From NCBI GenBank assembly GCA_943704425.1, contig CALSCP010000733.1, positions 62,001 through 126,000 on the forward strand: a stretch of 64,000 nucleotides of DNA, in the 5' to 3' direction. The notes beneath the pieces are model-generated. The model ran no database searches and was not told the origin of the DNA. It saw only the letters and a list, made by a program, of their open reading frames with translations. The position numbers were made by a program, and so were the translations under genes. Below, one piece after another: positions 1 through 27,509 of the stretch. How positions within the stretch are numbered: the first letter of the stretch is position 1; every line of letters starts with the position of its first letter. The DNA is from Ministeria vibrans ATCC 50519 (taxonomy: Eukaryota > Protista > Filasterea).

Positions 1-3000
1 CGACACCATACTCTTCGCCATCTCCGAATTCTCCGTCACTACAACTCCAACTACAGTTGCATGGGCCTCGTTCACCAATTCACGAGCTACATGGGGAAAT
101 CGCGAACGGTCATCAGCATTGGGATACCCATCCGTCTGAAAAATGACGAGGCGACGGGCTGCTTCTTTCGGACGCCAGTGAAGACTTGAAATTGCCATTT
201 TAAGCGGTTTCGAGTACGCCGTCAAACCGAACGAGTGCCTCAAGTTGCGAATCCGGTTGGCACCTTCATCAAACGTCGTAGAGCCGCACTGAAAGTGTGC
301 AAACACTTCAGAGTCACTCCCAAATGGAATGAGCGCCATCCGGTTGTCTGGGTTCCGCTTCAATGTGTCCTGGCACAGCTGCTGAGCAAACCGCACCGCT
401 TGGTCTTTGTAACTCCACATGGAGCCACTCAGATCGAGAATCACACACACATCGCTTGGTGGGGTCAGCGTCACTTTGTTCAGCAGCTGGGGAAGCGGTA
501 TGGATGATAGGCTAGGAGCAAGTGCCAGTTTTCTCAGCGACTCCGACGACGGCCCAGGCGCATCTGCCTTCAGACCCACAAAGTGCATGTCGACGCCTGT
601 TAGCCAGGCTGTTGCGTTGGCCACGTAGCGGTCTGTGCCACCCTTCTCCCACTCCAACCACAACTTGGTAAAGCCCACATCGACTACCACACGGCCACGA
701 TGGTCTCCAAAGTTTCCCTCGTTCACCACCACAAGAGACTTTGCTTCTTTTGGGCCTTTGTTAGCGGGAAAGCCTCCAGTCACCACCGTCTTCCAGTTCC
801 GTGGAATATTCTGCGGCACAGCCACGGTCTCACCCTCATACAGCACTTGAATGCCCGTCATCAGGACGTGGTCGGGCGTTACGCTAAATTGCCCGCATGA
901 CTGCATTGTGCCATCGGGAGCGGTTACTCCCTCTGCCGCCACAAAACTCCCGCCAGGAATGTTTCCCGCCAAATGCATCTTCCCGCCGGTAAGGGCACGC
1001 AAGACCACATTCGCATGCCAAAAGTGTGGATCATTCTCGCCAAACACAAACAGCCCACCTCGCTGCCGGTTGAAAGACAAGCACGCGCTCGCCAGTGTCT
1101 CTGCCAGCACCTCCACGCGTCTGGCTTGATTTTCGCATCGCCGCACCACGTCAACCTCAGGCCCACTAATCACCCAGGCCACTTGGAATTTACCGCTTTT
1201 CAACTTGTTCACAAACTCCATCTCATCACACACAATGTGCAACTGGAAGCCCTTGAGACCCAAGCGTGATTCGATGTTTTCTTTCAGGTTCTTAGTTTTC
1301 AAGTGACGTCGATACACAACCGGATCCCACAAAGTATCAGAGGGAAACAGCGTGCGACATTCTTGTCGTCGATGATGCTGCGGACTTAACCCAATTTGGA
1401 GGCCGTCGCGGACATAATCAAAGTCACGCATCATGTCGCCCTTCTTGCGCAAATTCTCCAAAATGAAGTTTGCCTCCTTGTCGCTGCGGCACTTCATCAT
1501 CAGGAAGCCGTATTCCACCGAAAAGTCGCCCAGAAGCACATGAAAGCCATCAAAGGCCTTCTCCCGTGCCAAGTCAAAGTGCGCCCCTCGCGGATTCTTG
1601 TACTCGTCCTGCACCACAGTCTTCTTCTTCAGCTCCTCACGCAAAGCCGCCGCCCCCAGAGTTTGATTGTAGTACGCCAGAATGCCCGGATGCTCCACTC
1701 GAAGCAAACGAGAGACCACTTTCAAGCTCGCGCGTCGGCGCTCCTCAAGCTCTGCCTTGGCACGCTCCATCATCAGAGTTGTCGCATCGCGTCGTGTCGA
1801 CCGATCATCACACCCGTGCAAATGGCGAAAGTGGTCTTGCAACACTTTACGCGCCTCGATGTCATGCCACGCCGCTCCAGGCCAAATCTCGTTTGACTTT
1901 CGAAGGGTGCACAAACCGTCGAAAAACGTGCGCTTTAGAAAGTCTGGCGATTCCAACAGCTGCTTCACCTTGATCGGCGCCAGCCATGGCTTATGCAACT
2001 GCGTCAGAAACGCCAGCTGCCACGGCTTGGGTACAACCAAATGGGAATCCTCGCGAAGCATTCCGCGCGCCAGTACACCCTGCATAAGTTCGTCCTCGGG
2101 GAGACACACGCGACCCCGTTCCAACGCTTGCGCAAACTCCTCATCTTTCAAAAGACCAATTAATGTGGCACTGCCAACATCGGGATCACCATCACGGTTG
2201 TCGACACGGAAAGCGTGCCATAAGCACATCTCCTGCAACAACTCCGACGTGACTCCTTCGCACCCATGCATCACTCTGGTCAGTTGCTCCAGACCAGATG
2301 GCCACTTTCGGTGTGCCGGATACTGCGATTCGGCCAGCCAAAGCGCAGCCTTGTGTGTCAGCTTTTGCTTCTCAACATTTCCCAACGCATGCGCACTCGC
2401 AAAGCGAGGATCAGGTGCAAGCTCAGCAAAGACTCCCGTGAACAAGGTCACCACGTTGCTGCGCGCTTGTCCCGAACCTTCACGGTCCTCTCCAACCAGT
2501 TGACACATCGCACAATAGACATCTTCACTCAGTCGCTTGTTCATCTGCACCAGCTCGGACTCTTCTGTCATCGGTACCTGAAGCATTTCCGTACCATAGC
2601 GTGACGCCCAAAGGAGCATGCCACGCCGCAATTGAGCATCGTCGCCCACACGCTGCAAGACATGCTTGTCACACCGCACATACAGTAACCAAGTCGCGTG
2701 CAAAAGCGGATTGCTCGGTCCGATCTCCTGCTCCACGAACTTGCGGCTCGCCAACCTCACAACGCGCTCGGCCAGATCGTTACCGTGCTTCTCTCCGATC
2801 GTCATCGCCATGAGCGAGCACAAGTTCACAGGGGCCACCGCATTGAGACACGCCTGCTGGTCGGGACACACCTCCAAGAGATTCAACAGATCCGGCACAC
2901 TGCTGATGAAACAACGACTCCACTCGACACTTGCCTTATGCCATGAGATCGCCGCACTTCGCTGCAGATTGGACTGAATCCACTTCAGGTCGGTGTAGTC

Positions 3001-6000
3001 ACCGTGCTCGGCAAACGCTCGACCGCAAGCAAGCGGCTGTCGCTGCACGCCAATCGCGGTCACCAGAGGAAAGTCGGGCTGGTCAATCACAACGAGACGC
3101 TGCAGCACGGCCACGTCGGGCAATTCAATTTTCAGCATGGCGTCCTTCTCGCTGACTCGTTGGTGCGCATTGCTGAACACATAGCGAACCCATGACTGGA
3201 GTCGGAAAGTCGGATGGAATCGCGCGGAGTACGGCGCCTGCGACGTGTACTCGGGAAACGACATGAAGGTGTAGCCGTTGGGCTCGGGATCGTCTTCGAC
3301 ATCGGAGTTATCCAAGTTCACGTTGATAAAGCCTTCGGACATGAGCATCTCCACCGAGATGGGGGGATAACTCAAGCTCGCCGCGGTCGCCGACACCAGA
3401 GCTGTGCGCACAAGCAAACTCATTGGATCAGTATCGCGCTCGTTCGCAAGTACACACACCGTCCTGGCGAATTCCGTACTCCGTTTCTGCGGGTTCAGTG
3501 CTAACGTTTGGCCAAATCGTCGGAAAAATTGCAGCATATGAAAGGCAACGCGCTCCGTCGTGAGCACACCAAGCTGCGGTGCCTTGTCGTGCAGGACCTT
3601 GGCAAGCTCTGAAACCACAGGTCCCGCTGCAAGAACTTCAATGAGCGTCTCGCGGTTGCGAAACGTCAGCACGTCGTCACTGAAAAGCGCTCGAATCACA
3701 CCGCACCACCAGTGCAACTGCTCAATAACAGCGGTGCGTCGCATTGGATCGTCGGGCAGTGCCTTGGGCCGTTCCTGCAGAACAAGTCCGCGAATGTGCA
3801 TCGCTGGCAGACGACAACGGAAAATATCTACTCTCGCCGAGCCACACTGCCACGCCTTCACCAGATCCACATCGTGCTTTTCCATGCGATTTCCATAAAA
3901 AATTGTGCGCACATTGTGCTCTTGCGAGCGAACCGACAAAAACTGAAAAAGCTGAAACTTCTGACGCTCCGTCAGCATGTGGTACTCGTCCACGACGAGC
4001 CACAAACGGCCCTCGCGACCACACTGACGCGCCAGGAGCGACACCAGCGCCTCTTCAACCAAGACACTGTTGCTCGCGTCAAAGTACTGAAACTGACCGC
4101 CATACTCCTTCGCATCTTTAGCCCACAGCCTGCTCACCACCTTCTCCATGTAGCTCGTCTTACCCGCACCCGGCGGCGAAATCACAATCATTGCGCGAAG
4201 TTTCACCAACGACTGTTGCAACCCACCTCCCACATTGGCTTCCGTGCAACGAAGCAGCTCTTTGAGCTGCTTCTTCCAGTCACCCCGATAGTTCGTGGAC
4301 GAGCCGAGCATGAGCCAGCCGCTTTGATCGTCATTACTGTCAGGCGTCGTACTGTCCGGATCGACATAGTTCACATTCTCAATGGACGGTGGTGCACTCG
4401 TCGCGTCATCATCGTGGTCGGCCGGATGTGCCATGGCATATTCCAGTTCAACTAGAGTTGGCCGCACAAAGTGGTCAAAGTTGCAGCGGTCGCGAATTTC
4501 CGAAAAGTTGCGGTCCGTGTCGAGCTCCTCAAAGTAAATGTAGTGGAATGGCACTGCCTTTGTGTACTCGGCACACCATTTGAGTAGCGCGTCGGAGATG
4601 CGTCGTACTCCGTGCACGTACACAATAAGAGTGGCGGACGAGAAGGTGCGTACAATGTGCCGATAGAGCTGATCGTCCGACGTGAGTCCTTGCTTCCGCA
4701 ACAGCGCCACGTTGACAAAGTCAACCGGAAAGAGACGCTCGCTCAGGAGATAGCGTGTCGCAACGGAGCACACAAAGAGTCCGTACACGCTACTCGTGTG
4801 TCGTACAAATTCGTCGACGCCGTGCGGCAAACGCGTGTACTCGCGCAACACGTGCGACTGCTCCTCGTCACGGTTTGGATAGGTGTCTGCCAGAGAAAAC
4901 GCGACGATGGCGTGACGTAGTTGTTCACTCGCATTCAAAAGCTCGGGCAGTTGGTACTCGTGACTCAAAACCAGCCGTAACATCCACCGAATCGTCTCGT
5001 TTGCAACCGGTGCTGTAATGCACGCACAAATCCACGCGTGCAAATCCGCCGACATATTAGCCAATCGTCCGTTGAGAGTGTCGTTGCGCAGGATGTAGCC
5101 AAACGCGTGCTGAGCAGCACCATCCTGTCGTTGATTTGCTCCACAGCGCACAAACACCATCTCGCCGGCATGATGTGTGCGCACCTCGCACACCATGTTC
5201 GCCAGACCGGGTGGAATGAATCGCTCGTCGCGCTCGACACGAAGACAGGAGAAAAGTTTGACGTCGGAACGAATCTGTCCGTCGCCCCACCCTTGAACCC
5301 GTGACTCCTCGCTCAGCAAACCAAAGTTTTTGGCCTCGTCAGCACTCGACACACCCAGCATATTTTTCGCCTTGAATCTCTCGGGAATGCCCCCCAACAG
5401 AATCATCTCTAACAACTTGTCGTGAGAAGAAGTACTCTGTGACACAGCCAGTCCATTGCGTAGCACATCGCGCACCGTCTCGTTCACAAGATGTGATGGA
5501 AGCCACTGACGAAGTGTGCTCTCCTCCAAGAAATCACTGTTTGAAGAAGGTCCGTTGGAGAGCTCCTCTGTAGCTTCCTCCTGACCGAAGGGGCCTGTAA
5601 ACATGTCTTCATGGTTCTCCGCCAAGAAATCACTGTTTGAAGACGGTCGGTTGGGGCGCTCCTCTGCAGTTTCCCACTCGAAGCCTGTAAACATGTCTTC
5701 ATGGTTCTCCGCCAATAAATCACTGTTTGAAGACGGTCCGTTGGAGCGCTCCTCTGTAGCTTCCTCCTGACCGAAGGGGCCTGTAAACATGTCTTCATGG
5801 TTCTCCGCCAAGAAATCACTGTTTGAAGACGGTCGGTTGGAGCGCTCCTCTGCAGTTTCCCACTCGAAGCCTGTAAACATGTCTTCATGGTTCTCCGCCA
5901 ATAAATCACTGTTTGAAGACGGTCCGTTGGAGCGCTCCTCTGTAGCTTCCTCCTGACCGAAGGGGCCTGTAAACATGTCTTCATGGTTCTCCGCCAAGAA

Positions 6001-9000
6001 ATCACTGTTTGAAGACGGTCGGTTGGGGCGCTCCTCTGTGGCTTCCTCCTGGACGAAGGAGCCTGTAAACATGTCTTCGCGCTCGTTGAAATCAATTAAT
6101 GCCTTCCAAAAGTCGCTCTTTTCAGCGTCTAGCTCTGGTACTGCTTCACCCGACGCAACTGGACTGATGAGGCGTCGCGATTGCTCCAAGCAATTCCAAA
6201 AGTCGCTCTTTTCAGCGTTTAGCTCTGGTGCTGCTTCACCCGACGCAACTGGACTGATGTGGCGTCGAGATTGCACCACGTGATCCGAGAGCTCGCCAAA
6301 TGCCTCCGAAGAGTCGCTCTCTTCAGCGTCTAGCTCTGGTGCTGCTTCACCCGACGCAACTGAACTGATGAGGCGTCGCGATTGCTCCACGTGATCCGAG
6401 AGCTCGCCCAACTTACCTCGGAGCATGCTCGCCACCGTCACCTTGTCATCCTGACAAGCATTTGCATGCTTCCAAAGTTGGTCACCGACCCACTTGTACA
6501 ATTGGTCCTCCTCGGACAGGCTCGAACAAGGTGCTTCGGGCGCAGAAATAGGCCCCTGGCCGCTGTAGAGTGCCATGGCAACAAGCACCGAGAGAAAATC
6601 ATAGTACTCGGACACGAGTCCAAAGTAATTCAACATGGGTCCCAGCACAAACGCATCCGCAATGCAGTCGGAATCCGCCTCAAGGTTCACCGCAATGGGG
6701 CACAGCTGTTTGGTCGTCTGCGACTTCTTCAAGACAATGCCGTCACCCACCACAATGGCGTTCTCCGGCAGGTTGTTCACCAAAAAGCGCCAGGCTAACA
6801 GATTCGATGGGAAAGTCACCAGTGGGACCTTCTGGCGCACTGCATTGTCGTGTCGTCGCCCTTGTGACGGCAAGAAAAAGTTTGTATTGAGCAACTCAGC
6901 CTTGGACAGCAGCTGATAGGTGCTGCACGTCTCAAAGACATCATACCCGTCAGCAACATCCTTCACCAGAGCGCCTCCGGGCCCATCGATCACCTCAATC
7001 ACATCAGCGCACAGCGAAATCTCGGTATTCCACTTGTCCGAGGACACACTTCGACGACGCACGAGCGATCGAGCCTGGACAACAAAGTTCCTCTCGTTCT
7101 TGTCACCAAACGAAAAAGAAATGATACCCTCCTGCAGGTCCATCATGGACAGGCGGCTCGACGCGCGCTGAGCAACATCCACCGCCGCGCCGCTGGCCGC
7201 TTTCGACTGGCCATCGTCGACAGAAAGTGGGTGCAGCAAACTCGGCACCGAGCCGTGACGGCCACACGCATCAACAGTTCGACTCATACCACCGCTCTCG
7301 ACCCGGCCAAGCTCACTGCTGTCGCACGACGGCGCACCATCAGCAACGGAGCCCATGAGAAGCTGTTCACACTTGTGGCGTGTAGTCTTGTCAGAAAAGT
7401 CAAGGTCTGTGACACGATCCGGCTTACGACTGTCAACACGTTGAACAGCTTCTCCAAGACTGTCGAGCACCTGGGCAATGCCAGTCGCATCCGATTTTGC
7501 ACCTTCGGAGAGATGAGTCTTCAGCAAAAACGACCGTGCCTCGCGCAACGTGATGTCACAGCAATCGTGGGGTTCTCGCACAGACCACTCCTTTAACGCC
7601 AGTTTCAACATGATCAATCCAGTCTCATCGGGTTGGTCTGCCACAGCGACGCCGCGGTCGAGACCACCGCTACCGTTCGAGAAGCCAATGCCGCGAATAA
7701 GCCAGCGAAAAACACGGGGAAGAGTATTCGTGTTCGTATTGGTGTTCGTGTTGTGCCACTCCTTTGTCCGCTGTACCATGTCTTTCAACATGGGCTCTGC
7801 TACCTTCCGAGCTTCGCCAGCCTCCTGATACATCGCCTTGATCAGGTGCGCAAACACAGAGACGCGCTCTTCCGCCAGCGTCTCGTTCAGTGACTCCACC
7901 AGCGCAAGCACGGCCCGATGCCACAACTGATCGTAGTTGTGTCTCTCGGTGGCAGCAATGGTAATACCGGGCGCTTTGTCGGCGGGCAGAAACGAGCACA
8001 GAGCCTGAAGTGTGAGCGCACGATCATGCTGAGACGGGCCAAAGTAGCGCACAAGGGAGAGCGATGAGCGTTCGTGGACATCAAGTGCTGAGGGTACAGG
8101 GGTGTAGCATGGTTGGGCGAGAAACGAGTCAAGGGTGGAGGAGGACCATAGTGGTTGCTCAAGGTATTCGTCTCCGAGAGTCTCCTTGATCGTCTTGCAC
8201 AGCACAGAGAGTGAGACCTTCAAAGCCGCAAACCAGGCACATACCAGGTTGTACATGTAGCGAACGTTCGCGTTGGTGACCTCAACACCGCGCGTTTTCG
8301 GAGAAAAGTTGGGATAAGAAGCACAACGTTCGGCTTGTCGGCGGTGATGGGCCGCAAGCAAAACTCGGAAATTGGTGCGCATTAAATCCTCATCAAAGCC
8401 ATTGTCCACCACAATGTTCCATTGACAGGGAGCAAAGGTGAGCAAAGTGTCCAGCTCGCAAACTTTTTCCAGCTTCAACGACTCCGCGACACGCTGCCAC
8501 ATCATGCGCCCGTCGCTCTTTTGCTCGTGTACACTAATGTAGAATACACGGTCATCATGCTTCTGGCCGAGAAGAAAGGTCTTCGTTTCCGGCATGGGAG
8601 TGTACTTGTGAAACGCTTGATTAAAAGTGATCAGCAACGGGAGCGGTAGTAAGTGAGGCAAAACGAACCACTTGCCCAACGTTGAGCAGCCGAGCGGACC
8701 GAGAGCACGCGTGCGCATTGGAAATTCAACTTTGAGACGGTTGATCAGGACGAACGTTGCATTGTCAAGGCGGCAAGGCGATCCGTCAATGGCGTCGGGT
8801 CGCAATGGCAACTCTTGCTCTGGATTGTGCACCCATAGCAAAGCCACAATGGCGTGCATCGCTTGAAAATTAACAATCGGCTCACTGCCATTGACAAGTC
8901 GCTGTGTCATATAGCGCAAAAGCGCGACCTGAGCACTGTGCGATAGTCGAGCCACGTCACGTTTGCCAACTTTGATGACACCATCCGCAAGCGGTACCGG

Positions 9001-12000
9001 TGAGACGGAGTTGCACCAGTGTTGCAGCACAGCATCATGCAGCGAGGTCATGCCGTCGGCTTCGAGTGGCAAACCATTGGTTGTCGAAGGCGAACGAGCC
9101 TCATCGGACGGCGAGAGGTGCGACCAGGCGCCCACAAGTTTCTCAAGGTTGTCAGTCTGCAGAAACGCAACTGACCACAAAACACGCAAAGCTTCGTGCT
9201 TGGCATCGGGAAAATCAAGCGATCCGCAGCTCCGCAAAAAGTAGAGCACCGAGAGCTGTGGCTGCACCAGTTCACCGTTCGTCATGACACAGTCGGCAAT
9301 GTACGTGGAGACAGAGGCACTGTCATTTCCATAGGCCCTCTTGGCCCTTTCTATCACAGTCGTAGCCAGAAGATCGGCAGCGCAATGGGACGAAAGCAAC
9401 GACAACAAAAGGGCCACAAAAGCCGGTGAGAATTCGCCATCAAAGCTCGAAATGTCCTCAACTGACACAGGCTTCTCCTCGTCGGTCATATCCAGCAATT
9501 GGTACACAAAGCGCGCTAGAAGGGTTTGACGAAGAATGCTGTTGGTGTTGCGCACAGACGAGTGCAATATGGCCTGCAGCAAGCACAGTCCATACTTTGG
9601 CGCATTTTTCAGCACCTTCTCTTCCAACTCCTCCCGAGAGCCCACAATAAGGCGAGCCGCTACTTCGGCTTGCTGAATAAGAAGCAGTGGTGGCGAGTCA
9701 AGTTGAATCAGCACGCGCAGCAGAGGGGGCCACTGAGTTGGCGAATCGCCCACACGAAAGTGGACACCAGCACGCAACACAACCGCAGTGTGCTTGTTGC
9801 TGAGCGTGATTCTGGCATCGCAAAGTTGCTCGAAAAAGTTGGTGGCCTTGGTCGCGTGGAAGTAGGCAATGGAGAGTGCGGAAAAAGCAGCGGGAATGCG
9901 CTCTAGACTCCAATCGCACACGTGAAAAAGATTGTCAATAAGATGTAGATGAGGCAATGCGCTGGGAAGTGGACTGCTCGATTTTTCCATCGCAATAGGC
10001 ATAAGGCACCGTGTGAGCTGCTGCAAGGTACGTTCCTCGGCGCCCTGCAGCACGCTATCAAGGACCCTTGCGTCCAGCTGCATAATGAAGCGCAGAGGAT
10101 GGGAGCACATTGCAAGTGCGTCAAGAAATGCAGTGAGACTTGGGGGGGACTGTCGGAAGGGCACCCCAAGTTCGTTCCACGGTAACTCTTCCCCTCGCGT
10201 CGCAATTTGCAACACAGCTGTGCACACGCCTCCCTCCTCAAAGTCAGCAATTGATCCACGCGCCGCATACTTGATATTGGCGTCAAGAGAGGAACTCGCA
10301 CTCGACGGTAGACACAGTGTCTCAAGTAGAGAAAGACCCGAAATGTTCGGCAGTGTCGGTAGAAGCGAGTCCAGACCCTTCAGGACAGCTGAAATGCGCT
10401 CCCCCTCTCTCTGATCCGATGCAATCGCAACGTGAAGAAAGGTGTAGGCCCACAGACGCAAACAGTTGTGGTGGTGCAGAACTTGTGCGCACGATGCCGT
10501 AGCGTAAAACTGGTCAAAAGAGAGCAGGCGTGCGGGAGTGTCGCACCCAACGCCCCAGTTTTGCACAAGAAGGTCGACAAGTGACTTGAGCCAGATAGTC
10601 ACTTGTGTCGCGCGACCCGCTCCCTGCGCTCGCGGCTGCTCAGAAAAAGCACTGTCAAAGACAGCCTGGCAAATCACAAGCACTCCGTCCAAAAGATGCT
10701 CAGGAACACCAACGTCGGTAAAATCCATCTTGTTGAAAACAGTGCCCGGTTGGCTCTTGGTGAGCATGTCAGAGAGCGGCAGAGTGACGTGACGACCCAA
10801 CAATGTCCAACAAATCCACAGCACCCTGCTGCAGTCGGGGGCGCCGGAAGCCTCGTCAAGACGTGCACTGGCAGGCGTGGCGGGCTCTTGTAATGTCGAC
10901 GAATCCAGGTCGTCGTTCTCGCCACCGATATCCTCCGTGCGCAAGGAAGGGGGCACGTAGTGAGAAAAGTTAAAGATGCAGTTGGAGTTTGTGTCAAAAC
11001 GGTCCAACTCGGAAAGGGGAATGAGAGATGACAAGACAACGATTGTCTTGATGCCCTCTCGGACCAACGTACGCACGGCTGTGAGACGCTCCTCCGCTCC
11101 CAACAGGTGACTCCGTCGCAGCACGGCCCATACCATTTTCTTGCGACGCTCCCGACGAGTCGACAGCTGGAGAGTGGCAAGACGTTCAAAGAAGTCCACA
11201 TCACCACAATCCAGAAGCACTGGGTGCCCGAGAGCAACAGGTAAGGACTTGGTATGACGGGCTGCTTCCTCAACGCCACGGATGAGACGATCCGTCACAA
11301 CAGCGTCTCGCTGAACTACCACCGCGACCTTGGCGCTGAGATTCGGCTGGCCGACTTCCATCGTCGTTGTCGCATTCGTCTCTGGTGTACTGTGTTGTTG
11401 CTGAAAGGCAGCACCACCGTCGTTGGGCACGCTCAGGAGCCATTGAAGCAACGACTCGCGCCAGCTGTCGAGGTTTCTGTTGCGCTCCTCAATGGCTTTC
11501 CAATCACGCAAGCTCATCCCCGTCATCTGGTCCAGCAGACTATCAGTCATGCGGAAAAGGAGCGCAAGAGGGCTGTCCTTGGCGAAATCAACGGCGGGTG
11601 AACTGACCATGGCGGTGGTGCGCGAGGAATGTAGAGTGGGTGCGAAAATATGTGCGGCGAGATCGGTGGAGCGCAAGTTGTTGATCAGCGCAGGGCTGTG
11701 TTGCAGTACAATACGAAGAGATCCAGCGTCACCAAGAAAAGGGTGCACAAAGCGCGCCATGGCACTGGCGGAGATGGGCTCGCCGAGGGAAAGAAAGGCA
11801 ACGGTAAAGCAACAGCTTTGCTCCAGCTCGCGCAATCGAGCGGTCATAGCTGCCAGGTTGGAGCGCGCCAAAGTGAGACGTACAATCACAGGGCGCCAGG
11901 TGTCCCACGACTCGGCCTGACACACATGGAGAAGACGTGTGAAATCTTTCTCGTCGAGCACGAGAAGCCGACGACTCGAGTCCATCTTGTCTTCGCTCAA

Positions 12001-14315: not shown

Positions 14316-14597
14316 GATCCCTCAGTCGCAACAGTACACACACACACTCACACACACCGAGTCCGTCTCGAAACAAACGAAAAGATTTGAGAGAGTGACT
14401 GAGATTTATTTATTTGTCTGAGAATAAATAAACGAAGAAATTATCTTGTCGTTCGTTTTTTTCTCGAGGTTGATGCAACGGAAAAAAGTAAGTTGATCAA
14501 GTCCCAAAAAACGGCCAAGTCAATGAATTTCTTCTTCATACGCTCTTGAAGTCTAAAGTCCCTTTGCTTGGCTGGCCACTGCAGTCTCTCGACCGTC
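14316..14597. promoter_or_regulatory. Probable bidirectional promoter between the two giant ATPase genes
   Basis: 282 bp between divergent predicted ATGs, with A/T tracts and a short CA repeat. Inferred from position only. Confidence 0.55.
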
Positions 14598-17500: not shown

Positions 17501-20500
17501 TCTCAAGATCCTCAACATGGCCATTGTTGATTTTATTCGCACACCTTTCACGCGCTTTGTCATCGACGGCAACAACTTTGAGGGCGCACTAGTCATGCTC
17601 AACTCGCAGTTTCCCGCCAACTCCTGGGACGGTTTTCGGCTTCTTCTCGTCGACGTTCAGCCTTCCGTTGCTCCAAGCGATCTTGTCCGCCTTCTCTCTG
17701 TCATCCAGCGCCCCGGTCTTGTCTCATTTTTGATCTACAACGCAGGTGTTGTTGCAGGTCTGCGCTGTGTTGACCGCCTCTGCAGTCATGCGGAATGGTC
17801 TCGCTCAGGCACCGACAACTCAAGCGACATTGACTCCATCGCCCTGTCGCGTGTACTTCTTACCCGCCTTACACCCGAATCGACGGACCGCCTGATCGAA
17901 TTTGACTCATCCGACCGTGCCATCAGTGCTCTCTTTTTGGCGCTCAATGCGTCGGCGAGCGTCGCCCCCGAAGCAATCGTGAAAGCATGCCCGCCAATCC
18001 AGAAAACGTTGCTTCCGCCTGGTGCTGAGACAAGTGCCTGGCGCGAGCGTGTTGGTGACTTCTTTGACCTGGACGTGTCCACCGCCGACGATTCCGACTT
18101 TTCCAGCTACATTGTCAAGCGACATGATTCCGCCTCGCTCGGGCTCATGATCCTGGTGGGTGCCTCCCCCGAGTTTCTCACGGCCTCCCTTGAGGCCAAG
18201 CCCTGGGCCAACACCCTTTTTGAAGTCGACTCATCGCTTCGCTCTACCTCTTCCAGTAGCGCCACTTCGCACAAGGCTGCATCGCAGCGTCGCTCCTCGT
18301 TTGCGCCCGACTCCCAAGGTGATTGGACGCAAAAACTCTTTTCCTTTCTCGAGACTAGCCGCGACCCTTGTCAACCTGTGCGCGTGATTGTTCACAAGGC
18401 ACACCTGCTCTCAAAGAAGATGCGACGCGACATCGTATATGCGGCTATTGCCGCAAGCACTCGCACTCGCGGCCTTTCTGTGCGCCTCCTGTTCATCGAG
18501 CCCGCCTACAATCCGTGCTACGAGACAATTTTCGAGTCGTCCGATTTTGTCACGCAAGCCACGAAGAATGGCAGTGCGGCGCTCGTCACCAATGACTTGC
18601 ACCCGCTGTGGTGCTATGCTGCGTCGCCCATTGACCCACTCCCACAGGATGCAACCGACTGCATGATCCTCGTGTGGTGTGTGCGTCGTGCTTTTTTGCT
18701 GCTCGGCTCGACTTTTGTCGCTCCGTCGCACTCCGATCCGGCTCAGCAAGAGAATCTCGGTCCTTCCTCCACCCCCCACGAAGCACTCAAAACCGCAGCA
18801 ACGAACCTGCCCGACAGCAACAAACTGTGCGAGTTTTTTCAAACGTACCCTCACGCTCTGACAAAGCTTGCGATGCTCACCAGCAACCTGAAACAGTCAC
18901 ACAATGTGGAACTCGACGAACTTCGACGTCTCGTCGTTTTCTCCGCCTCTGTCGCCCTTAAGGCAATGCAAAATATTGTGCCGTATGTTGTGCCGGAAAC
19001 GGAAGGGCGCCCTGTCTTTGCGACCCTCGCCATGGCGACGCTTGCGGCGGTGGAGTTTGTCGGCCAACAGTCCGCCAGTAAATGCGTGGAGCTTGAGTGC
19101 ACCTTTCCCAAATTCATTGAGCGATGGCCTCTCGCATGTATCGCCCCACAACATGTGCGTGTAGCCGCCTATGTGAGCTTTCTGAAGTGCGCCATCGCAT
19201 CCATTCGTGGCGCCCATGAGCACGACCAGGCATGTTCGCTCTGGGCCTTCAATGTGTTCCGCAAGGCCCAAGGTCGCTCGTTCACATCCTTGTTGCCCAA
19301 TTTTCTTCAACCGTACGTGCTCTCGCGACGCTCTGCCTCTGAGACTGGCAACGGTAACGACCAAGGATCTGTCGGCTACCTACTAGAGACGACACCCCTT
19401 GCGACTTCCAGCGCCGCCTCTGCCGGCTTGGCTCACCTCGTCATCATGAGTGGCCGCCTTGATTACAACACGCTCACCGACTCGTGGAACAACTTTGCAT
19501 ATGGCAGTGAGGCCCTGTTGACCATCCTCAAGTCTGGCAATGACCCACTGCTTTACTTGCTGTGTGTCTCCTCGGCGAGCCTCTCGCGTATTTTTCCAAG
19601 TCCCCATGCTTTGAAGATGAAAGTTACCAACGATTTGCGCAGACGATTGTGCGAACAGCTGTGTGCCTTGTCCGCCTATTTTCAATATGAGGAAGAGGCT
19701 CGCCGGCGTATCGGGACCGGTGGAGACTCAGCCAAACCCTTGGCGGAGAGACTCGATTGGCTTCTTGATCGCATCAGCTTTGTCAAGTGGCTCCTTGTCG
19801 CGTCTCACCTTGAGGATGCTCCTTCCGTTGCCTTTCACAGCGACGACCTTGACCGAGTCCTTGCACGAGGTCATGTTCCCTTGGATTCCGGCGACAGCAA
19901 CTTGGATCCCACAGTCATTGCCATGCTACTTTGTCTCGACGAGCTCGGCAGCAACTCGGGCGAGAGTACAACGTTGTTTCAGAGCCTCAAAGAAGTGAAA
20001 CTCTCTGCGGTGTGGCTGCTGCTTGCTCGGGAAGATAAAGGCGCGGAAGAGAACGCGCGTGTTAGACTCCAGCTTGGCGAAGCATGGACCAAGAGCCTGA
20101 ATGAATCTTTGTCGGCGCGCGACTCATCTGCGGATCATTTGACTCACCCCACGATCAACTCGCGTGCGAACGTTCATTTCGACGATCGCTCCGATACGTC
20201 ACTCGTAGACTATGTCGTGGAGACTCTTCTCAACTTGCCTAGGCTTGCCTCCTTGGATCAATATTCGCTCGTTTGCGATATGTCATTCAAATTCACGCCC
20301 AAAGCACTGGCTCGAGTCTGTCTTCATTTGGAGACACTCGATCGAGTTGACCAAGCCGCGATGTTGGCTCTTGTCCACGACAACATTGCCGCCACTGAAG
20401 TGTATCGTCAGGTCGTGGAAGTTGCCTGTGAGTTTCCTACCCTGAGCCGTCTTCTGAAATTTCTCAATGCTGTTGTTGCCATTGTGCTTCGCTGCGGATT

Positions 20501-23500
20501 CGAAGACTGGCGCGAACCCAAGCACCTCCAGCTGCTCCTTGCTCTTCGCCCGTCGTTTGCTCTTCCGGTGGCCCTTTTGGAGTTTCTCCTTATGTGTCTA
20601 TCCCGTGATTCGTCTTTAACGTGTCTCCTCTCCGGTGATTCCCTTCCTTCCGAATGGCTTGAATATTATGCAAAGCGCTCGGATTCTGTACTGAGCAAAG
20701 CCGCGCAGCATGCGCTTGAAGTATTGCTGACCGTGCAACAGCAATCCACGCACCCCACCGCCTTGCTCCATGACTTTGCTCTCAAATCGAGCTCCCCTGT
20801 CGCCATGGCCTTGCTCAGTCTCGTGTGGGCGAACGAGCCAAACCCTATGCAGGACCCGCGCGACCGTTTGCAATTTGTTGGCAAGCTGGTCATGGATGAG
20901 AGCACGGCCGACAGCATTGTCGATGGCGCGATGGCTCTCATGCAACAGTCGCTTGTTAATCGACATTGCTGGAGCTTGCGGTCGCTGGCAATCTTTGCTT
21001 CGTGTGTCTGGTGCATTTTTCCTTGCTCTGGTTTTTGCCCACCCCTGCTCGTGTGGCACTATCTTTTCGACTCGTTGGAAGCATCAGCAGAGGAAGCCGG
21101 AGACAGCAGTGCTGAGTCAGCTGATCCCATTTTGCTATTGCTGTGGCGAGAGTCGCGAACACACAAGGCAAGCTACGATCACGCCACGGAGAGTTACACG
21201 AGAATGGGAGACATTGCCAAGGCTGTTTTCCTGCCAATGACAGCCGATCTGTCGGTACTCTCTGCCATTTCGCAACTCTTGCCAGACAACGACGCTCTTC
21301 AAATTAGCACCATTTCCTCGACAACCAAGACACACCCTGATGAGTCCAACGTACGCGCACTTGCGCATCCGTTATGGAGCTGGAATGACTTTGGTCGCTC
21401 CGATGGACCATTGTTGGCGCTGTTGTCCCGTGCATTGAATGAACTTCACAAACGTGATGCCGAATGGTGGCCCCGAGGTCCCCCCTCTTACGTTGACGCA
21501 TTTGACGAAGATACTGTTTCTGGTGCCGAGTTTGACGACTATCAGCGTCTCTGGGGATCTGTGCGACGTATCCAGCTGGACGCCGGCCTCTCAGTCGAGG
21601 TTTTAGCAAACAACATTGATGCGTACGCGAGCGCCTTGGCATTGCTTCATACACCTGAGCGTGAGACCGACCGCGATGCATTTGATAACTGCGGTTACAC
21701 TCTGGAGAATGCCTTAAATGCTGTCTGGTTGCTCAGTCTCTGGTTTGCGCGATGTGGAATCTCGTGGGAACTTATTCCGCCTAGCTGCGATGCGATTCCA
21801 GACTTTCTAGTGCGACGCTTACATGAGAAGCACTTTGAAGGACTCACCGCCGTCCTTGAGACCGCTCTGGATGGCGTGCGAGACGGCACCATTCACCAAC
21901 TTCCCCAAGACATTAGCACCCGCATTTGCGGGATTGAGCACATGAGTGTGCAAACTCAACTAAGTTTTCATGCAACAAACGAGTCAAATCTTTTTGATCA
22001 CGGGCTGTCGAGCTTCAGCTACACGCTCGGCCGTCTGTTTGGCTTTGCACCGCGCTCTCTTGCTCACATTATCGTCGGTGACGGCAATGGCAGCTGGCCA
22101 CGCTACTCGCGTCACACAACCAAACGTGAGCGTTGTGAGAACCTCCTCCCGGACTGCACGCGTGCGATGCTTGACTTTGACGAGCAAGAAGATGAGTGCC
22201 GCTTCAAAGTGCGCACCGTCTTTTACTATTGTACGCTAAAGGACACCGCCGAGGCTCTGTATCCTGATCAGGATTTCCCCTCGGTTGTCTTTATGAAGCA
22301 GTACGTGTTTGATCCCGTTGAACAGTGGATGAAGACGTGCGACTTTGACATCGCTTCCCACAAGGTCCGACGACGAACTGCAAAGTTCATGTTGTTACTG
22401 GAGGAGCTGCTAAAAGCGCAGGGGCAGTTTGATCACGTGATGGAGTTTAACAACGCGCACAAGTTTGAAAGCCTTGGGAAAGAGTGGCGGAGCAGTTCCG
22501 CGGATGTCAAGATACTCGACTCGCTCTCTACTCTGTATGAGGATGCCAAAGCACAGGAGCCGCGCATCGCGAATGACGAACTTACGTTGCAGAGGGAGAT
22601 GCTGTCAACCATCCTGAAAAAAATCTATCCCGAGTTGACCGTGTCACCGGAGTCCGCTGCGCCGCATGTCGAATTTGAGCCTGTCGACGATGATTTTGAC
22701 CTGAGTGACCTGACTTCCGTCGCCGAGGATGACACGGCGAGCGACAGTACGGATGTGAGCGAGCATGACACCGACATTGATTATGCGACATTGTCTCCGC
22801 TCGCTCGTGTGGTGACCGTTCACGGCGATGGCGAGCAGGAAGCTCAGGGTGGCGCAACTTCGGCCGACGATCATGAGGTGCTCAACGCGGCCAAAGTCCG
22901 ATGGCTGTCGGAGGGAAAGCTCATTGTTGATGCAAGGGAGCTTCTCTTTCTACCTGAGACCGGCGCGGCCAGCTCCGAGATTAACGGTGCCCCCGAGCAT
23001 GTGTACTTCAAGCGTATGCGCGTGCGTGATGGCGCGCAATGTTTTCTGATTTTGCACCACGCCGAGGCACTGATTCGTGAGAAGGCAACTTGTGACGCTT
23101 TCCATGCGCTCAAGGGTGGTTCTGCACCAAGGGACACGTCGTGCACCGACTTTACGTACGTGTCTTTCTGCAACAACGTCCACAATGTATGTCTCAAAGA
23201 CGAGGTACTGCTCACGTTTGCAACCTATCGCGATGCGTGGATTTATCTGGACCGCACTCTCGGTGCGCGCTCCCTTGTCGTTGGACGAGGTATGTCGCTG
23301 TATCGCAATGGTGGACGGTCGTGGGAGGGTGTGGCGTTCATGCAGTCGCTCAGCCCCGATAATGTGATTTCTTTCATATCTGAGATCGACGCAATGGTGC
23401 CGTTTCTTCCTGGTGGCATTGCCGGATTACTTGGGCACTTGGACAAGAGAACGTCTTTGATTGAGTTCATCAAGACACTCGTGGTGAAACTCGTGCGTGG

Positions 23501-26500
23501 CGAGATGCTCAGCCGTGATGTTACCGAGAATGATTTCACGCACTATGTGAACAGCAAGTCAACAACTGGCTTGGATGAATCTGACTTTGGGCGTCTGTGG
23601 ACGAAATTGGGTGTTGCGTTACGTGATCCTGTCTGGCTCCGGCGCATTTTCAGCATTGGTAGTGAGACGGAGGGATTTGGTGAGCTGGGCAAACTGATTG
23701 TGGGCGAGGAGAGACGTTTGACAGCGCCTGATCTGTTTGTGCTGCGGATGGGAACTGATAGTGGCAGTGGGGCTACAGAGGTGTTTTGTGACCTGCTGCG
23801 ACGACGCAAAGACATTGAGTTGTCGTACCACTCGATGGCGGAGCTACCCGTGGCCGTGTCGTTTTCATCTCAGATTCTGAAGCGATGCGAACTTGAACTG
23901 CTCGAGGCAAAGGAGAGCAAGTCGAACGTTGCCTTTCAGCTGAAGGAGCTGAAAGGGTGGTTGCTAGATGTGCTATCGTCGCCGCTTCTCACCAAGACGA
24001 TGAAAAGCTTCCTCGTCATCGTGGACCAGGGAGCCAAAGGGACATGCCTTCCCACCAATATTGCTGAGCAGGATCGCTTTGTCGCTATCATGCTTGCACG
24101 TTGCTGTCCCGTTCCGAAACTGCGCGACAGGCTGCTCTCATTTGTGGACACCGGCCGTTCCAACAAGGACCATTCACTTGAACAGACATGTACTCAACGC
24201 CGCGACTTGCGCTACGGCGTGGTGGTGTGCAATGACTTGTCGGAACAACTGCTCACGCGACCCTTGACCGCCAGTGCTGTTGTGGTGATGAACGTGAAGA
24301 ACGAGACTCCGAAGGACGACGCACTCTTCTTGCGTATTGTGAGCAAATTTGACAGCAACTTCCACATTGTCTATGTCCATGGGCTTCGCAAGGCAAGCGA
24401 TATTCTGCTCAAATGGTGCTGCGAGTACACCTATCGCTGGCCGTGGCGATTCATCTTCTTTCAGGAACTCGACATCATGTTCAACTTTCCCGAAATTCGC
24501 GACCGCATCCAGCACTTCCCGGTCGATGGACTTGACGACTCAAGACAGTCGTTTGCACTTGTGGAAGAGCACCAGTGGGTGCGGGCGCACGAGAAGCTAC
24601 CTGACGAATGTGCTGCTGCGGGAAATGATGCGCATTGTGCGCCGGCGACTGCGGGCGCTGAGGAGCGCAATGAGGACGATGAGGACGACGAAGATGATGG
24701 TGTGTGCGATGAAGATGGGGACAACGATGGCGATTTGAATTTGTTTGATTGGCAGGAAAAGGCCAAGAAACTGCTGGTGGGAGCTTCGTCGTGTGTGCTG
24801 CTGCTCACGTCGCCACCGGGGACAGGGAAAACATTTTTTGCCCGGGACCTGTTGAAGGAGGTTGACGAGAAGAAGTACAGTGAGACTGTTGTGGACGCGC
24901 GACGCTTTGACTGCAGCGACGATCGTCTGGTGGTGCAGAGTCTCTCGCACTTGCTTGACGAAGCGTTCCCGAGCCAGGGTCAGCGAGGTCTGCTGATTGC
25001 CGACGAGTTTCACTTGCTCAAACCTCACCAGAAGCGCGAGCTGTTCTCGTGGTTTACGCCACGACTGAGCACCCTACGAGTGCTGCTTATTGGCAACCGA
25101 CAGCTACGCGAAGATATTCAGCTCATCAGCGATCTGAAGAAGGAACAGGAGCCGACAAGTAAGGGGACACCACGGAGGGATGGCCGTGGTGTCGCAGACG
25201 TCGAGGCGCAATCGTGCTCCTCCAAGACCGCGCCGGGCTGTAAAGTGCGCAAACTCATTGCGACGCTTTCTCCGAAACGCATTGTGAACGTGTGCTTGAA
25301 CGAGAAGTCGTCCCTGTCGGATGACGAGAAATTTGCTCTTGAGTGGTGGTACACGTTGCTTTTGACTCTATTTGGCCCCGAGGCATTGTCATTGCGCGAT
25401 GCCTTTTACACAAGCCAAAAGGTTGCTCTGCCATTGCGAAACTCTCATACTGTCCAGTCGAACACGGCAGAGAGTCTTCGGAAGCGACTGCTTGTGAACA
25501 TGCCACTCATGAGTGCGAAGATGGCAGGAGTGCTTGCAGAGAGTTTTGTGGAGGCTGTGCGCTCGGATAACCACGATTCTCGCAGCTTGCCGTCGACCAC
25601 GCTGCTTTCGTCACTGTGTCGGGTGGCTATAAAGGTGTCGCGACCTTTGGACAAGAGCCCCCGTCTAACGTCATTTGTCGCCTTTTGTCGTACCGAGTTG
25701 ATGCAGCGCTACGATCCGGCGACGCGTGCCAAGGAATGGATCAAGAGAGTGCAGAATGAAGCGAACATTGAGGCGTCGTGTCAGATCATGCCCGCCGCAC
25801 CCAACAGCATGTGGATCGACCAGGACCCTGTGCCTGTGGTCATGGACGAATCTCATGTGCACTCGCGCCAACGTGCTGTTGTTCAGCAGGCCGGGGCTCT
25901 TGACGCTGCTAAGTCGTCGGGTGTGCACTTGGCGGTGGGTCTTGTGGAGCGCAATTTGACGCTTGAGCGACTGCGCTATCTTGTGGTGCACTCGCAGCCG
26001 GTCAACTGGGTCTACGTGCAACGCCAGTGGAACACATTCAGCCCCGTGACAGATCTGCAGGCGTACGAGGAACTGCTGCAGGCCTGCTCCAACCCAATTC
26101 TTTGTCTTCAGGCACTCGCCTGTGAGCTTCTCGACGCGTCGCCCGATATTGACCATGACCGGCGGAAGCAGGCCGAGTCACACTTTTGCATGCTGGCGGA
26201 GCGAAGTGCAGAACGCGATCGTCGGCATGGCATGGGCTTGATTGCGTCAAAGGTGTGGAAAGCGTTTTCGCTGAAGACCAAACTAAATGCTAATGAGCTG
26301 TCGGACGATGAGGCTGTGTCGGTGGAAAAGTCAGTGGGTGCGCTCGGACACAGCACTGTGCCGCAAATGTACGCAGTGTGGCGCGGCCTGGTTCTGTGCG
26401 ACCACCTGCGCGACGTTTCGGTGAGCGCAACGTCTCCGCTTGTGATTGACACACTGTTGTGGGCGAGCATCTCCGAGGACTTCAGCAATGTGTACGCTAC

Positions 26501-27077
26501 GCGGGACAAGACTGACGGTGTGGAAACAAGGGTGAAAAAGCGGATTGTGCCGTTGCTTCTCAACGTGAGTCGCTCTCTCGCAAGCTGGTGGCTTCAGAGC
26601 AAGGACACGGCTAAGAGCGACAAAGCTGCAAAGCTCTTGTGCGATCTGTGGCGTCGTGGTGTCTTCCGTCAGCTTTTGAGCACGTCGGTGGTGCACCGTT
26701 TGGACACAAGCAGTCTGCTGTGTCTCGCTCGCCATGTCACCTCGCATCTGCTGGACGGCTCGCCGTGGCTTGCCGCCACCTCCAAACTGTTGAACAGCGA
26801 CAATCAGCGTGATGAGGACAGTCTTGCTGGGTTTTGCAACGACCACGATTACCGGCGATGCATGAGAAGTGCCTCGGAGACGATGGGGACGCAGAGAGGT
26901 TTGCGCCTGGTCGCCGATCTTGCTTGCGCCTTTGTCCGTCGGCAAAGTGGTGCGAAAACTAGCTATAGCTCTGTCAAGGAATCGTTTCGAACCCTTTTGT
27001 CGGGCAAAGACTTGACTACTGTAGCGATCAACGAGGACGATCTTCAAAAGTTGCGAAGCGACCAGATTGTACCTTGA
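14598..27077 (+). CDS. Giant (~4,100 aa) P-loop/AAA+-type ATPase protein, paralogue of the divergent minus-strand gene; exons 14598-14779, 14875-15118, 15198-27077
   Basis: 3954-aa ORF extended by two in-frame 5' exons (introns in phase 2 and phase 0). Walker A SPPGTGKT 24810-24833; Walker B LLIADEFH ~24990-25013; IGNR sensor-like motif. Many colinear motif matches to the minus gene. Confidence 0.9.
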
Positions 27078-27509
27078 TGGTGACCTGAGAGAGAGAGAAT
27101 TAAACAAATTTATTAGTAATTATTTTGATTTTTTTCAGACTGACGAAATATTCTCTATATTGTACACTTTCCCTTTAACAGGTATTTAATTTAATCCTCT
27201 ATACTAATTGCTAGTAATAAATGCTTTGCGATTCATAATAATAAATTTCACTCGCACACAATCTTGATACGTATTATGTCTGAGACTATCGTTCTTTTAT
27301 CATCAGTCAGCAATGAGTGAGTCAATACGACGCTCCAGCCTCCAGTGCAACCACTTGAGTCATCAGCCTATCCACTCAGTCGACAATCGGTTCACTAATC
27401 ACTCATACCTCACTTAACTCTTCTCAATTTCACTTCTCAATCTTTTCACTCATTTCAGACTTCAGTCCATATTCAATAATCAATTTCATTTTGTGTCTGC
27501 ACCATCTCA

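What the first reader, a model, noticed from the sequence alone, without database searches (positions are those of the whole stretch)
1..27077. Head-to-head pair of giant paralogous ATPases, one with extra integrated domains: candidate paired sensor/effector (immunity-like) system
Seen: two giant genes (>4,700 aa, hidden from the ORF track, and ~4,100 aa) diverge from a 282-bp spacer and are colinear homologues over nearly their whole length. Examples, minus vs plus: KIILPS/KILLPS; LPHLHLIDNLFHVCDWS/LPRLASLDQYSLVCDMS; LVTFPSNLLAWRFL/LLTFATYRDAWIYL; YVHGVRRISDALLKWCAEYT/YVHGLRKASDILLKWCCEYT; FEELDTDRNFSEIRDR/FQELDIMFNFPEIRDR; SPPGAGKT/SPPGTGKT; VDEYHML..QK..LF/ADEFHLL..QK..LF; WWCGVIRALFSDDVLTFR/WWYTLLLTLFGPEALSLR; LLWAS/LLWAS. 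Both have two short 5' exons (phase-2 then phase-0 introns) and one 12-14 kb exon. Only the minus gene continues into extra domains. Known: divergent paralogue pairs where one member has an integrated domain are typical of paired plant NLRs (RRS1/RPS4, RGA5/RGA4, Pik-1/Pik-2), and giant AAA+ proteins such as RNF213 act in cell-autonomous defence. Inference: a co-regulated hetero-oligomeric ATPase system of a family I cannot name.
Basis: partly seen in the sequence, partly recalled or inferred. Interest (0 to 1): 0.9.

Follow-up and report, generated by a model that had tools for sequence, protein, structure and literature searches.

The report
Conserved pair of giant AAA+ ATPases
Two huge neighbouring genes, read in opposite directions from one short promoter region, are ancient sister copies of an undescribed ATPase family, and they also lie side by side in a choanoflagellate and two uncultured relatives, so they probably work together; nothing here shows a role in immunity.

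Summary
A minus-strand gene (M, about 4,750 aa, ending 137 nt before the window start) and a plus-strand gene (Pl, about 4,052 aa) diverge from a 282-bp spacer. Spliced RNA contigs show that both are transcribed.

- **Homology:** an ~850-aa core around one intact AAA+ module is clearly shared. Family profiles extend colinear homology to M 1059-3707 / Pl 1288-3756. The first ~1,050-1,290 aa are not detectably alike.
- **Family:** the core defines an unnamed protist family (341 cluster representatives), seen in choanoflagellates, Bodo, dinoflagellates/Syndiniales and Kipferlia.
- **Age of the pair:** M-type and Pl-type form separate, well-supported clades. Monosiga brevicollis has one of each, also head-to-head. 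Two metagenomic relatives have them adjacent tail-to-tail.
- **M's extra C-terminus:** it ends in a VWA domain with an intact MIDAS motif. This is conserved across M-type proteins, so it is not a variable NLR-style integrated domain.

Best reading: a co-regulated pair of paralogous AAA+ proteins acting as one machine, with M's MIDAS domain as the gripping part. This resembles Mg-chelatase I/D or midasin by analogy only. Immunity is untested, and physical binding is unshown. An RNF213 homologue lies next to M.

The parts
1..13626 (-). M gene, giant last exon (4,587 codons; continues 134 nt plus the stop codon beyond the window start)
   Evidence: Open frame; splice joint at 13626/13689 in RNA contigs.
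13689..13956 (-). M gene exon 2 (268 nt), flanked by a 62-nt and a 138-nt intron
   Evidence: Joints with GT..AG on the minus strand in runs X6 and X8; phases worked out.
14095..14330 (-). M gene exon 1: ATG at 14315; RNA contigs end at 14330
14316..14597 (.). 282-bp spacer between the two start codons. Only about 222 bp separate the ends of the RNA contigs, so this is a shared bidirectional promoter region.
14553..14779 (+). Pl gene exon 1: ATG at 14598; RNA contigs start at 14553 and 14588
14968..15118 (+). Pl gene exon 2 (151 nt)
15198..15780 (+).
   Evidence: Joint 15780/15835 with GT..AG in X6 and X8.
15835..27077 (+). Pl gene giant last exon, including the stop codon
2602..5148 (-). M conserved core (ORF residues 2860-3708): unclassified alpha/beta domain, variable insert, AAA+ module with lid, helical domain. 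Walker A (SPPGAGKT) at 4156-4179.
23883..26468 (+). Pl conserved core (ORF residues 2896-3757). Walker A (SPPGTGKT) at 24804-24827. Residues 2985-3757 were modelled with pLDDT 84.
37..453 (-). M C-terminal VWA domain with an intact MIDAS motif (DxSGS, T, D)
   Evidence: Pfam VWA_2 E 2e-11 and VWA E 2e-7; motif conserved among orthologues.
454..2601 (-). Remainder of M's type-specific C-terminal extension. A glutamine-amidotransferase-like fold is a weak lead only.
   Evidence: Conserved with P0001, P0002, P0006, P0007 and P0009; atlas lead.
10036..11466 (-). M residues ~754-1230: possible degenerate upstream copy of the AAA+/helical module (Walker motifs lost)
   Evidence: Reciprocal profile hits, E 2e-4 to 5e-3; marginal.
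18330..19661 (+). Pl residues ~1045-1488: possible degenerate upstream copy of the module
   Evidence: weak recurrent hmmsearch hits at the same relative place in many family members.
5520..6408 (-). In-frame tandem repeats (periods 96/186, 90 and 111 nt; 87-98% matches) in an M-specific linker between the N-terminal homology and the core
   Evidence: The linker has no counterpart in orthologues: BLAST alignments stop at M 2386 and resume at about 2840.

Best explanation
M and Pl are ancient paralogues of an undescribed family of giant protist AAA+ proteins. They are kept together as a gene pair because they act together.

Shown:
- Each protein has a long N-terminal region, a family-specific alpha/beta domain, one AAA+ module with all catalytic motifs, and a helical domain.
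- M alone ends in a ~900-aa extension with a MIDAS-type VWA domain.
- Both genes are transcribed from one ~220-280-bp shared promoter region.
- The M-type/Pl-type pairing recurs in Monosiga brevicollis and in two uncultured relatives.

Inferred:
- A single active AAA+ module needs a neighbour to hydrolyse ATP, so the two proteins assemble through their AAA+ modules into a hetero-oligomer.
- ATP turnover moves the large arms.
- M's MIDAS site grips an acidic residue of a substrate or of Pl. This parallels the paralogous Mg-chelatase I/D pair, where only D carries the VWA domain, and midasin, whose C-terminal MIDAS domain works with its own AAA ring.

The cellular process is unknown. I favour a constitutive remodelling or assembly task over inducible immunity.
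For: - Paralogy: BLASTP E 7e-36. Profile-profile M 1059-3707 / Pl 1288-3756, E 1.7e-68; the N-part alone gives E 4.7e-16 against 0.9 for a reversed control.
- Intact Walker A, Walker B (DExH), GNR and further Arg/Asp columns are invariant in both types.
- AAA+ fold: model pLDDT 84, pTM 0.88; Foldseek RFC subunits E 3e-5; VIA Z 12.7 over about 200 residues of alpha/beta plus lid.
- VWA with an intact MIDAS motif, conserved in M-type proteins.
- Both genes are transcribed and spliced in the same RNA runs.
- Tree: M-type clade SH-aLRT 99, Pl-type clade 100, each holding one Monosiga protein. The Monosiga genes are head-to-head about 1.3 kb apart.
- In L004 and L005 the M-type and Pl-type orthologues are adjacent tail-to-tail, 243 and 604 bp apart.
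- All four genomes with usable context therefore keep the pair, despite about 25% identity between the partners.
Against: - No physical evidence of binding: the complex prediction of the two AAA+ regions scored 0.00, which is no answer.
- Homo-oligomers are equally possible.
- Adjacency could be a relic of tandem duplication.
- Orientation differs between genomes, so a shared promoter is not universal.
- The Monosiga M-type gene model ends before the VWA domain, and no VWA was found downstream.
- The AAA+ clade is unresolved: Z values are flat across classical, clamp-loader, initiator and STAND types.
- The function is argued by analogy only.
Confidence: 0.5

Rival explanations
1. Immune-like paired system. 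One giant ATPase senses a pathogen cue and the other executes a response, perhaps together with the neighbouring RNF213-like ubiquitin ligase.
For: - The head-to-head paralogue pair is conserved.
- An RNF213 homologue (E 4e-23 to solved RNF213 chains) lies convergent to M, 546 nt between the two open frames.
- In an unrelated contig (L011), another family member sits head-to-head, 62 bp away, with a giant protein carrying an RZ finger and a dynein-like AAA domain.
- The distribution is patchy, with lineage-specific expansions: at least 6 paralogues in Bodo saltans and 4 in this genome.
- M carries recent in-frame repeat expansions.
- Sequence evolution is fast.
Against: - The extra domain of M is conserved, not variable.
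- No NB-ARC or NACHT domain, and no nuclease, TIR or other effector domain; only weak P-loop hits to defence models.
- Orthologues are one-to-one and colinear over their full length across choanoflagellates.
- Both genes are expressed in ordinary culture RNA.
- This genome has several RNF213-like genes, so one lying nearby is less telling (unchecked notes).
Confidence: 0.12
2. Two independent giant ATPases. The adjacency is a leftover of an old tandem duplication and has no functional meaning; each forms its own homo-oligomer.
For: - Gene orientation is not conserved: head-to-head here and in Monosiga, tail-to-tail in L004 and L005.
- A second pair of family members in this genome lies 21.7 kb apart with other open frames between.
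- Bodo saltans has near-identical tandem copies.
- Both partners keep complete catalytic motifs and so need no partner in principle.
Against: - The partners are about 25% identical, and each type is 30-45% identical between species, so the duplication is very old.
- Linkage nevertheless survives in four of four genomes with context, including after a rearrangement that changed orientation.
Confidence: 0.28

Closest known systems
Mg-chelatase subunits I and D (BchI/BchD, ChlI/ChlD) and the related CobS/CobT and MoxR-VWA pairs
   Same: A pair of paralogous AAA+ proteins in which only one carries a C-terminal MIDAS-type VWA domain. The two work as one hetero-oligomeric ATPase (established knowledge of those systems).
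   Different: No sequence match to those families. Both partners here keep active-site motifs. The proteins are more than ten times larger and eukaryotic. Complex formation is not shown.
Midasin (Rea1/MDN1)
   Same: Giant size (about 4,750 aa), an AAA+ ATPase part and a MIDAS domain at the very C-terminus of M.
   Different: Midasin has six tandem dynein-type AAA modules near its N-terminus. M has one active classical-looking module about 3,200 residues in, perhaps with one degenerate copy. It has no AAA_5 hit and a VWA-less paralogous partner.
RNF213 (mysterin)
   Same: A giant, mostly helical AAA+ protein. A true RNF213 homologue is the next gene beside M.
   Different: M and Pl have no dynein-like core and no RING, RZ or IBR finger, and they do not match RNF213.
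Paired plant NLRs with integrated domains (RRS1/RPS4, RGA5/RGA4, Pik-1/Pik-2)
   Same: Head-to-head paralogous NTPase genes, one of which has an extra domain.
   Different: No NB-ARC domain and no LRR. The extra domain is conserved rather than variable. Orthologues are one-to-one across distant species.

Membership tests
AAA+ ATPase superfamily | Walker A P-loop (GxxGxGK[ST]-like) and Walker B (hhhhDE) | tested here: met
   SPPGxGKT and hhhDE[YF]H are invariant in all six M-type and Pl-type cores. Weak Pfam AAA and AAA_22 hits at the same place.
AAA+ ATPase superfamily | Alpha/beta nucleotide-binding domain followed by a helical lid | tested here: met
   In the model (pLDDT 84), residues 197-455 align to the alpha/beta and lid domains of RFC, Cdc6/Orc1, Pex1/6 and others at Z 11-12.7. 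Foldseek probability 1.00 to RFC subunits.
AAA+ ATPase superfamily | Assignment to a specific clade (classical, clamp loader, initiator, STAND, dynein/MoxR) | tested here: inconclusive
   Z values are flat across clades. The GPPGTGKT-like loop and the GNR motif resemble the classical and clamp-loader types, but that is a resemblance only.
AAA+ ATPase superfamily | Ring or spiral oligomer with a trans-acting arginine | not testable with these tools
   Conserved Arg columns exist. The complex prediction gave no answer.
VWA / MIDAS domain (M only) | Pfam VWA match above the curated cut-off | tested here: met
   VWA_2 44.7 bits (cut-off 27) and VWA 32.1 bits (cut-off 23.8).
VWA / MIDAS domain (M only) | MIDAS residues DxSxS ... 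T ... D | tested here: met
   DLSGS, GLT and FQTDG are aligned and conserved in P0001, P0002, P0006, P0009, P0014 and P0020.
Midasin / MDN1 | Six tandem dynein-type AAA (AAA_5) modules | tested here: not met
   No AAA_5 hit in M or Pl. Profiles detect one active module and at most one degenerate copy.
RNF213 family | Dynein-like AAA core with a RING or RZ finger | tested here: not met
   No such Pfam hits in M or Pl. No BLAST similarity to the neighbouring RNF213 homologue U.
STAND / NLR NTPases (paired NLR with integrated decoy) | NB-ARC or NACHT domain | tested here: not met
   Only a sub-threshold NPHP3_N hit (E 0.056) in Pl. NLR and STAND structures score no better than other AAA+ proteins.
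STAND / NLR NTPases (paired NLR with integrated decoy) | An extra domain that varies between orthologues (integrated decoy) | tested here: not met
   The C-terminal extension and VWA domain are conserved across the M-type clade and its sister clade.
Mg-chelatase I/D-type AAA+/VWA pair | Paralogous AAA+ pair with a VWA domain on one member | tested here: met
   This is an architectural match only.
Mg-chelatase I/D-type AAA+/VWA pair | Sequence membership in the Mg_chelatase / BchD families | tested here: not met
   No such hits in Pfam, NCBIfam or the PDB.

The most novel reading that the evidence does not exclude
The M/Pl pair, possibly together with the adjacent RNF213-like ligase, is a previously unknown cell-autonomous defence or surveillance machine of heterotrophic protists. 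Its gene pairing has been conserved since before the radiation of choanoflagellates, the closest living relatives of animals. It would be an ancestral type of giant-ATPase immunity, distinct from NLRs.
Probability: 0.1. Interest if true: 0.9.

Novelty: new variant of a known kind. Interest (0 to 1): 0.6.

Why it matters
A family of 3,000-4,800-residue ATPases has no name, no Pfam domain for its conserved core and no paper that I could find. It is nevertheless present in choanoflagellates, kinetoplastids, dinoflagellates and metamonads.

A paralogue pair that stays linked across deeply diverged species is rare in eukaryotes and points to obligate co-function. Because the pair exists in Monosiga brevicollis, and choanoflagellates can be grown in the laboratory, the idea can be tested at the bench.

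If the two proteins form one machine, that machine would be a new type of giant AAA+/MIDAS device beside dynein, midasin and RNF213. If it is linked to the RNF213-like neighbour, it would bear on the origin of giant-ATPase immunity near the root of animals.

Tried and rejected
- **Complex prediction:** Pl residues 2985-3464 with M residues 2949-3448 scored 0.00 in both runs. This is no verdict, and I use it neither for nor against binding.
- **First structure model:** the model of the M core from six sequences was poor (pLDDT 60) and gave only weak Foldseek rows. It was replaced by the 48-sequence Pl model.
- **Sequence search of the PDB with the core profile:** only P-loop-level hits, E >= 0.04.
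- **Library scans of the cores and of the alpha/beta domain upstream of the AAA+ module (the pre-AAA domain):** Pfam, NCBIfam and PADLOC name no family; the alpha/beta domain has no Pfam hit even at E 10.
- **ESM Atlas:** generic AAA/ATPase_2/STAND-like clusters for the core. For M's extension, only a weak glutamine-amidotransferase-like lead.
- **5' exons:** compared exon by exon, they show no similarity between the two genes (z < 2). The mirrored intron phases therefore cannot be shown to be homologous.
it lies off the profile alignment path and is probably chance.
- **More than one degenerate AAA module:** none found upstream beyond the single candidate.
- **Photosynthetic alga as source:** no light-harvesting protein genes were found in the genome.
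- **VWA exon downstream of the Monosiga M-type gene:** not found.
- **Literature searches:** the Monosiga accessions and AAA+/vWA/giant/choanoflagellate returned nothing; RNF213 with choanoflagellate returned one ZNFX1 preprint that I did not read.
- **Joined spliced proteins:** never built or searched. Exons and open frames were searched by reference, and protein lengths come from arithmetic on exon coordinates.
Full report
**Anatomy**

The window is G000 contig C733:62001-126000, from a 29.7-Mb eukaryotic genome in 2,860 contigs.

- A minus-strand frame is open from 13725 to beyond the window start. With the upstream DNA it has 4,620 codons and stops 137 nt before the window.
- A plus-strand frame of 3,959 codons spans 15198-27074.

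I call the two genes M (minus) and Pl (plus). Residue numbers below count from the start of each open frame. The protein numbers are +130 for M. For Pl they are +111 before the third intron and +93 after it.

**Transcripts and gene models**

Two runs labelled as possible RNA (X6, X8) hold contigs that are identical to the window and carry GT..AG joints, so they are transcripts.

- M has introns of 62 nt and 138 nt. Its contigs end at 14330.
- Pl contigs start at 14553 and 14588. Pl has introns of 188, 79 and 54 nt.
- With ATGs at 14315 and 14598, the spacer is 282 bp. In both genes the first two introns are phase 2 and then phase 0.
- By arithmetic on exon coordinates, M has 163 + 4,587 = 4,750 residues and Pl has 111 + 3,941 = 4,052. 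This assumes no further introns in the parts I could not lay reads on.
- Contig depth cannot rank expression. It shows only that both genes are transcribed in the same samples.

**Are they paralogues?**

- BLASTP finds one significant block, M 2894-3357 against Pl 2917-3401 (25% identity, E 7e-36). The rest is weak scatter.
- With three-sequence profiles the block grows to about 850 residues.
- With profiles enriched by choanoflagellate orthologues, one colinear alignment covers M 1059-3707 and Pl 1288-3756 (2,061 columns, E 1.7e-68).
- The part upstream of the core is significant on its own: M 1059-2344 against Pl 1288-2712, E 4.7e-16, against 0.9 for a reversed control.
- The first ~1,050 and ~1,290 residues and the 5' exons show nothing.

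The genes are therefore true paralogues over roughly 60% of their length.

**What the conserved core is**

Six cores (M, Pl and their orthologues from two metagenomic contigs) align with 80 invariant columns. These include SPPGxGKT (Walker A), DE[YF]H (Walker B), GNR and several Arg/Asp/Trp positions.

A 48-sequence alignment gave a confident model of Pl residues 2985-3757 (pLDDT 84, pTM 0.88). Its parts, in order, are:
- a Rossmann-like alpha/beta domain, the most conserved stretch (YVHG..LKWC..EYT..NFxEIRDR), which has no Pfam match;
- a disordered insert;
- an AAA+ alpha/beta domain plus lid;
- a helical domain.

Foldseek and VIA-align place residues 197-455 in the AAA+ fold. The best matches are RFC, Cdc6/Orc1, Pex1/6, MuB, TnsC and STAND proteins at Z 11-12.7, with no clade standing out.

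Reciprocal profile hits of marginal strength (E 2e-4 to 5e-3) suggest a degenerate upstream copy of the AAA+/helical module with lost Walker motifs, at M ~754-1230 and Pl ~1045-1488. Weak recurrent hits appear at the same relative place in many family members.

**M's extra C-terminus**

After the shared core, M has about 900 more residues, ending in a VWA domain above Pfam's cut-offs. All MIDAS residues are present.

The extension is colinear in both metagenomic M-type orthologues and in Barroeca monosierra, where a VWA hit was confirmed (E 3e-16). It is also colinear in P0009, and the VWA part is present in the sister clade P0014/P0020. The Monosiga model stops before the VWA domain, and I found none downstream.

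The extension is thus an old, stable feature of the M type, not a variable integrated domain. A glutamine-amidotransferase-like fold ahead of the VWA domain is only a weak atlas lead.

**The family**

- A word-indexed search found only two relatives of similar length.
- An exhaustive profile search found 341 cluster representatives at E <= 1e-3, 101 of them at E <= 1e-30. Many are 3,000-4,100 aa long with the core at about residue 2,400-3,200.
- Of the 30 looked up, the named ones are all hypothetical proteins. They come from:
  - choanoflagellates (Monosiga brevicollis, Barroeca monosierra, Stephanoeca diplocostata, Salpingoeca infusionum, Codosiga hollandica);
  - Bodo saltans (at least six paralogues);
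  - Symbiodinium (mislabelled PAT23);
  - Amoebophrya;
  - Kipferlia bialata.
- No animal, fungal or plant name appeared, but the look-up was not exhaustive.
- No paper mentions the Monosiga accessions.

**The pair is ancient and stays linked**

In a maximum-likelihood tree of 57 cores, M groups with P0001, P0002, Barroeca, Monosiga P0007 and P0009 (SH-aLRT 99). Pl groups with P0003, P0004, Stephanoeca, Monosiga P0008, P0010 and S. infusionum (SH-aLRT 100). Full-length BLAST agrees with these assignments.

- In Monosiga brevicollis the two genes (locus tags 38957 and 38958) are head-to-head, about 1.3 kb apart.
- In contigs L004 (a JGI metagenome) and L005 (a Logan assembly) the M-type and Pl-type orthologues are adjacent but tail-to-tail, 243 and 604 bp apart.
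- All four genomes with usable context keep the two types adjacent, although the partners are only about 25% identical.
- This genome also has two more distant family members on contig C1092. They are divergently oriented, 21.7 kb apart, and fall in the Codosiga-like outgroup clade.

**The organism**

- The runs holding the sequence are marine or from algal cultures.
- No light-harvesting protein genes were found in the genome.
- M and Pl nest among choanoflagellate sequences.
- Earlier unchecked notes list holozoan-type genes.

I take it for a choanoflagellate or a near relative. This is an inference, not an identification.

**Neighbours**

- Convergent with M, 546 nt between the two open frames, lies a 3,834-codon frame (window -12181 to -680). 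Its AAA region matches solved RNF213 at E 4e-23, and it has an IBR-like finger near the C-terminus.
- In an unrelated intron-free contig (L011, GC 42%), family member P0041 lies head-to-head, 62 bp away, with a giant protein carrying an RZ finger and a dynein-like AAA domain. That protein is weakly similar to the window's RNF213-like gene but did not itself match RNF213 in the PDB.
- This is the best hint towards a defence context. It rests on two loci only, and this genome is said to hold several RNF213-like genes.

**Interpretation**

The evidence supports a co-regulated, anciently paired set of paralogous AAA+ proteins of an unnamed family. One partner carries a conserved MIDAS-VWA domain.

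The closest functional parallels are the Mg-chelatase I/D pair and midasin. M and Pl belong to none of the known families tested: midasin, RNF213, STAND/NLR, Mg-chelatase.

I commit to a hetero-oligomeric ATP-driven machine with a MIDAS grip (confidence 0.5). The rivals are:
- independent proteins linked by history (0.28);
- an immune-like pair (0.12).

Binding was not shown; the one complex prediction gave no answer.

Noticed in passing
upstream of the window: window -12181 to -680 (+), i.e. L003:7819-9999 and L002:3-9320: A 3,834-codon open frame convergent with M is a true RNF213 homologue. Its AAA region hits solved RNF213 chains at E 4e-23, with Pfam AAA_5 and AAA_7. It has an IBR-like finger near the C-terminus instead of a detectable RZ finger.
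   Followed up: partly
L011:1-20938 (ENA metagenome contig, GC 42%, no introns): Family member P0041 (3,645 aa) lies head-to-head, 62 bp away, with a protein of more than 3,300 aa that carries an RZ-type zinc finger (E 1.6e-12) and a dynein-like AAA domain. This is a second case of an RNF213/ZNFX1-type giant gene next to this family. The source organism is unknown and the flanking genes look bacterial-like (LtrA, SSF, radical SAM).
   Followed up: partly
G000 contig C1092: 1960-13329 (-) and 35088-47687 (+) (L013-L018): Two further, more distant members of the same family (3,790 codons; 3,242 + 952 codons) lie on one contig, divergently oriented and 21.7 kb apart with other open frames between them. 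They belong to the clade that holds a Codosiga hollandica protein.
   Followed up: partly
window 15781-15834: A 54-nt GT..AG intron that preserves the reading frame is spliced out of the Pl transcript. An ORF scan cannot see such introns, and more may hide in the giant exons, which were not covered by the one reads call.
   Followed up: partly
window 5520-6408: In-frame tandem repeats (96/186-nt units at 98% matches, then 90- and 111-nt units) lie in an M-specific linker with no counterpart in orthologues. This indicates recent expansion.
   Followed up: partly
window 27418-32601 (+): A 1,728-codon open frame starts 343 nt after Pl's stop. It has only sub-threshold Pfam hits (3'-5' exonuclease, DUF7515). 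Together with the RNF213-like gene, M and Pl, it makes four very large genes in about 45 kb.
   Followed up: no
JGI metagenome 3300045300, contig of P0020 (no DNA served): P0020, a VWA-bearing member of the clade sister to the M type, is followed on the same strand by another gene of more than 3,266 residues. This may be a further linked pair in tandem orientation.
   Followed up: no
Bodo saltans proteins CUG93876.1 / CUG93877.1 (cluster of P0044): Two family members with consecutive accession numbers on one 42-kb contig fall in a single 90%-identity cluster. This looks like a recent tandem duplication within a larger Bodo expansion.
   Followed up: no
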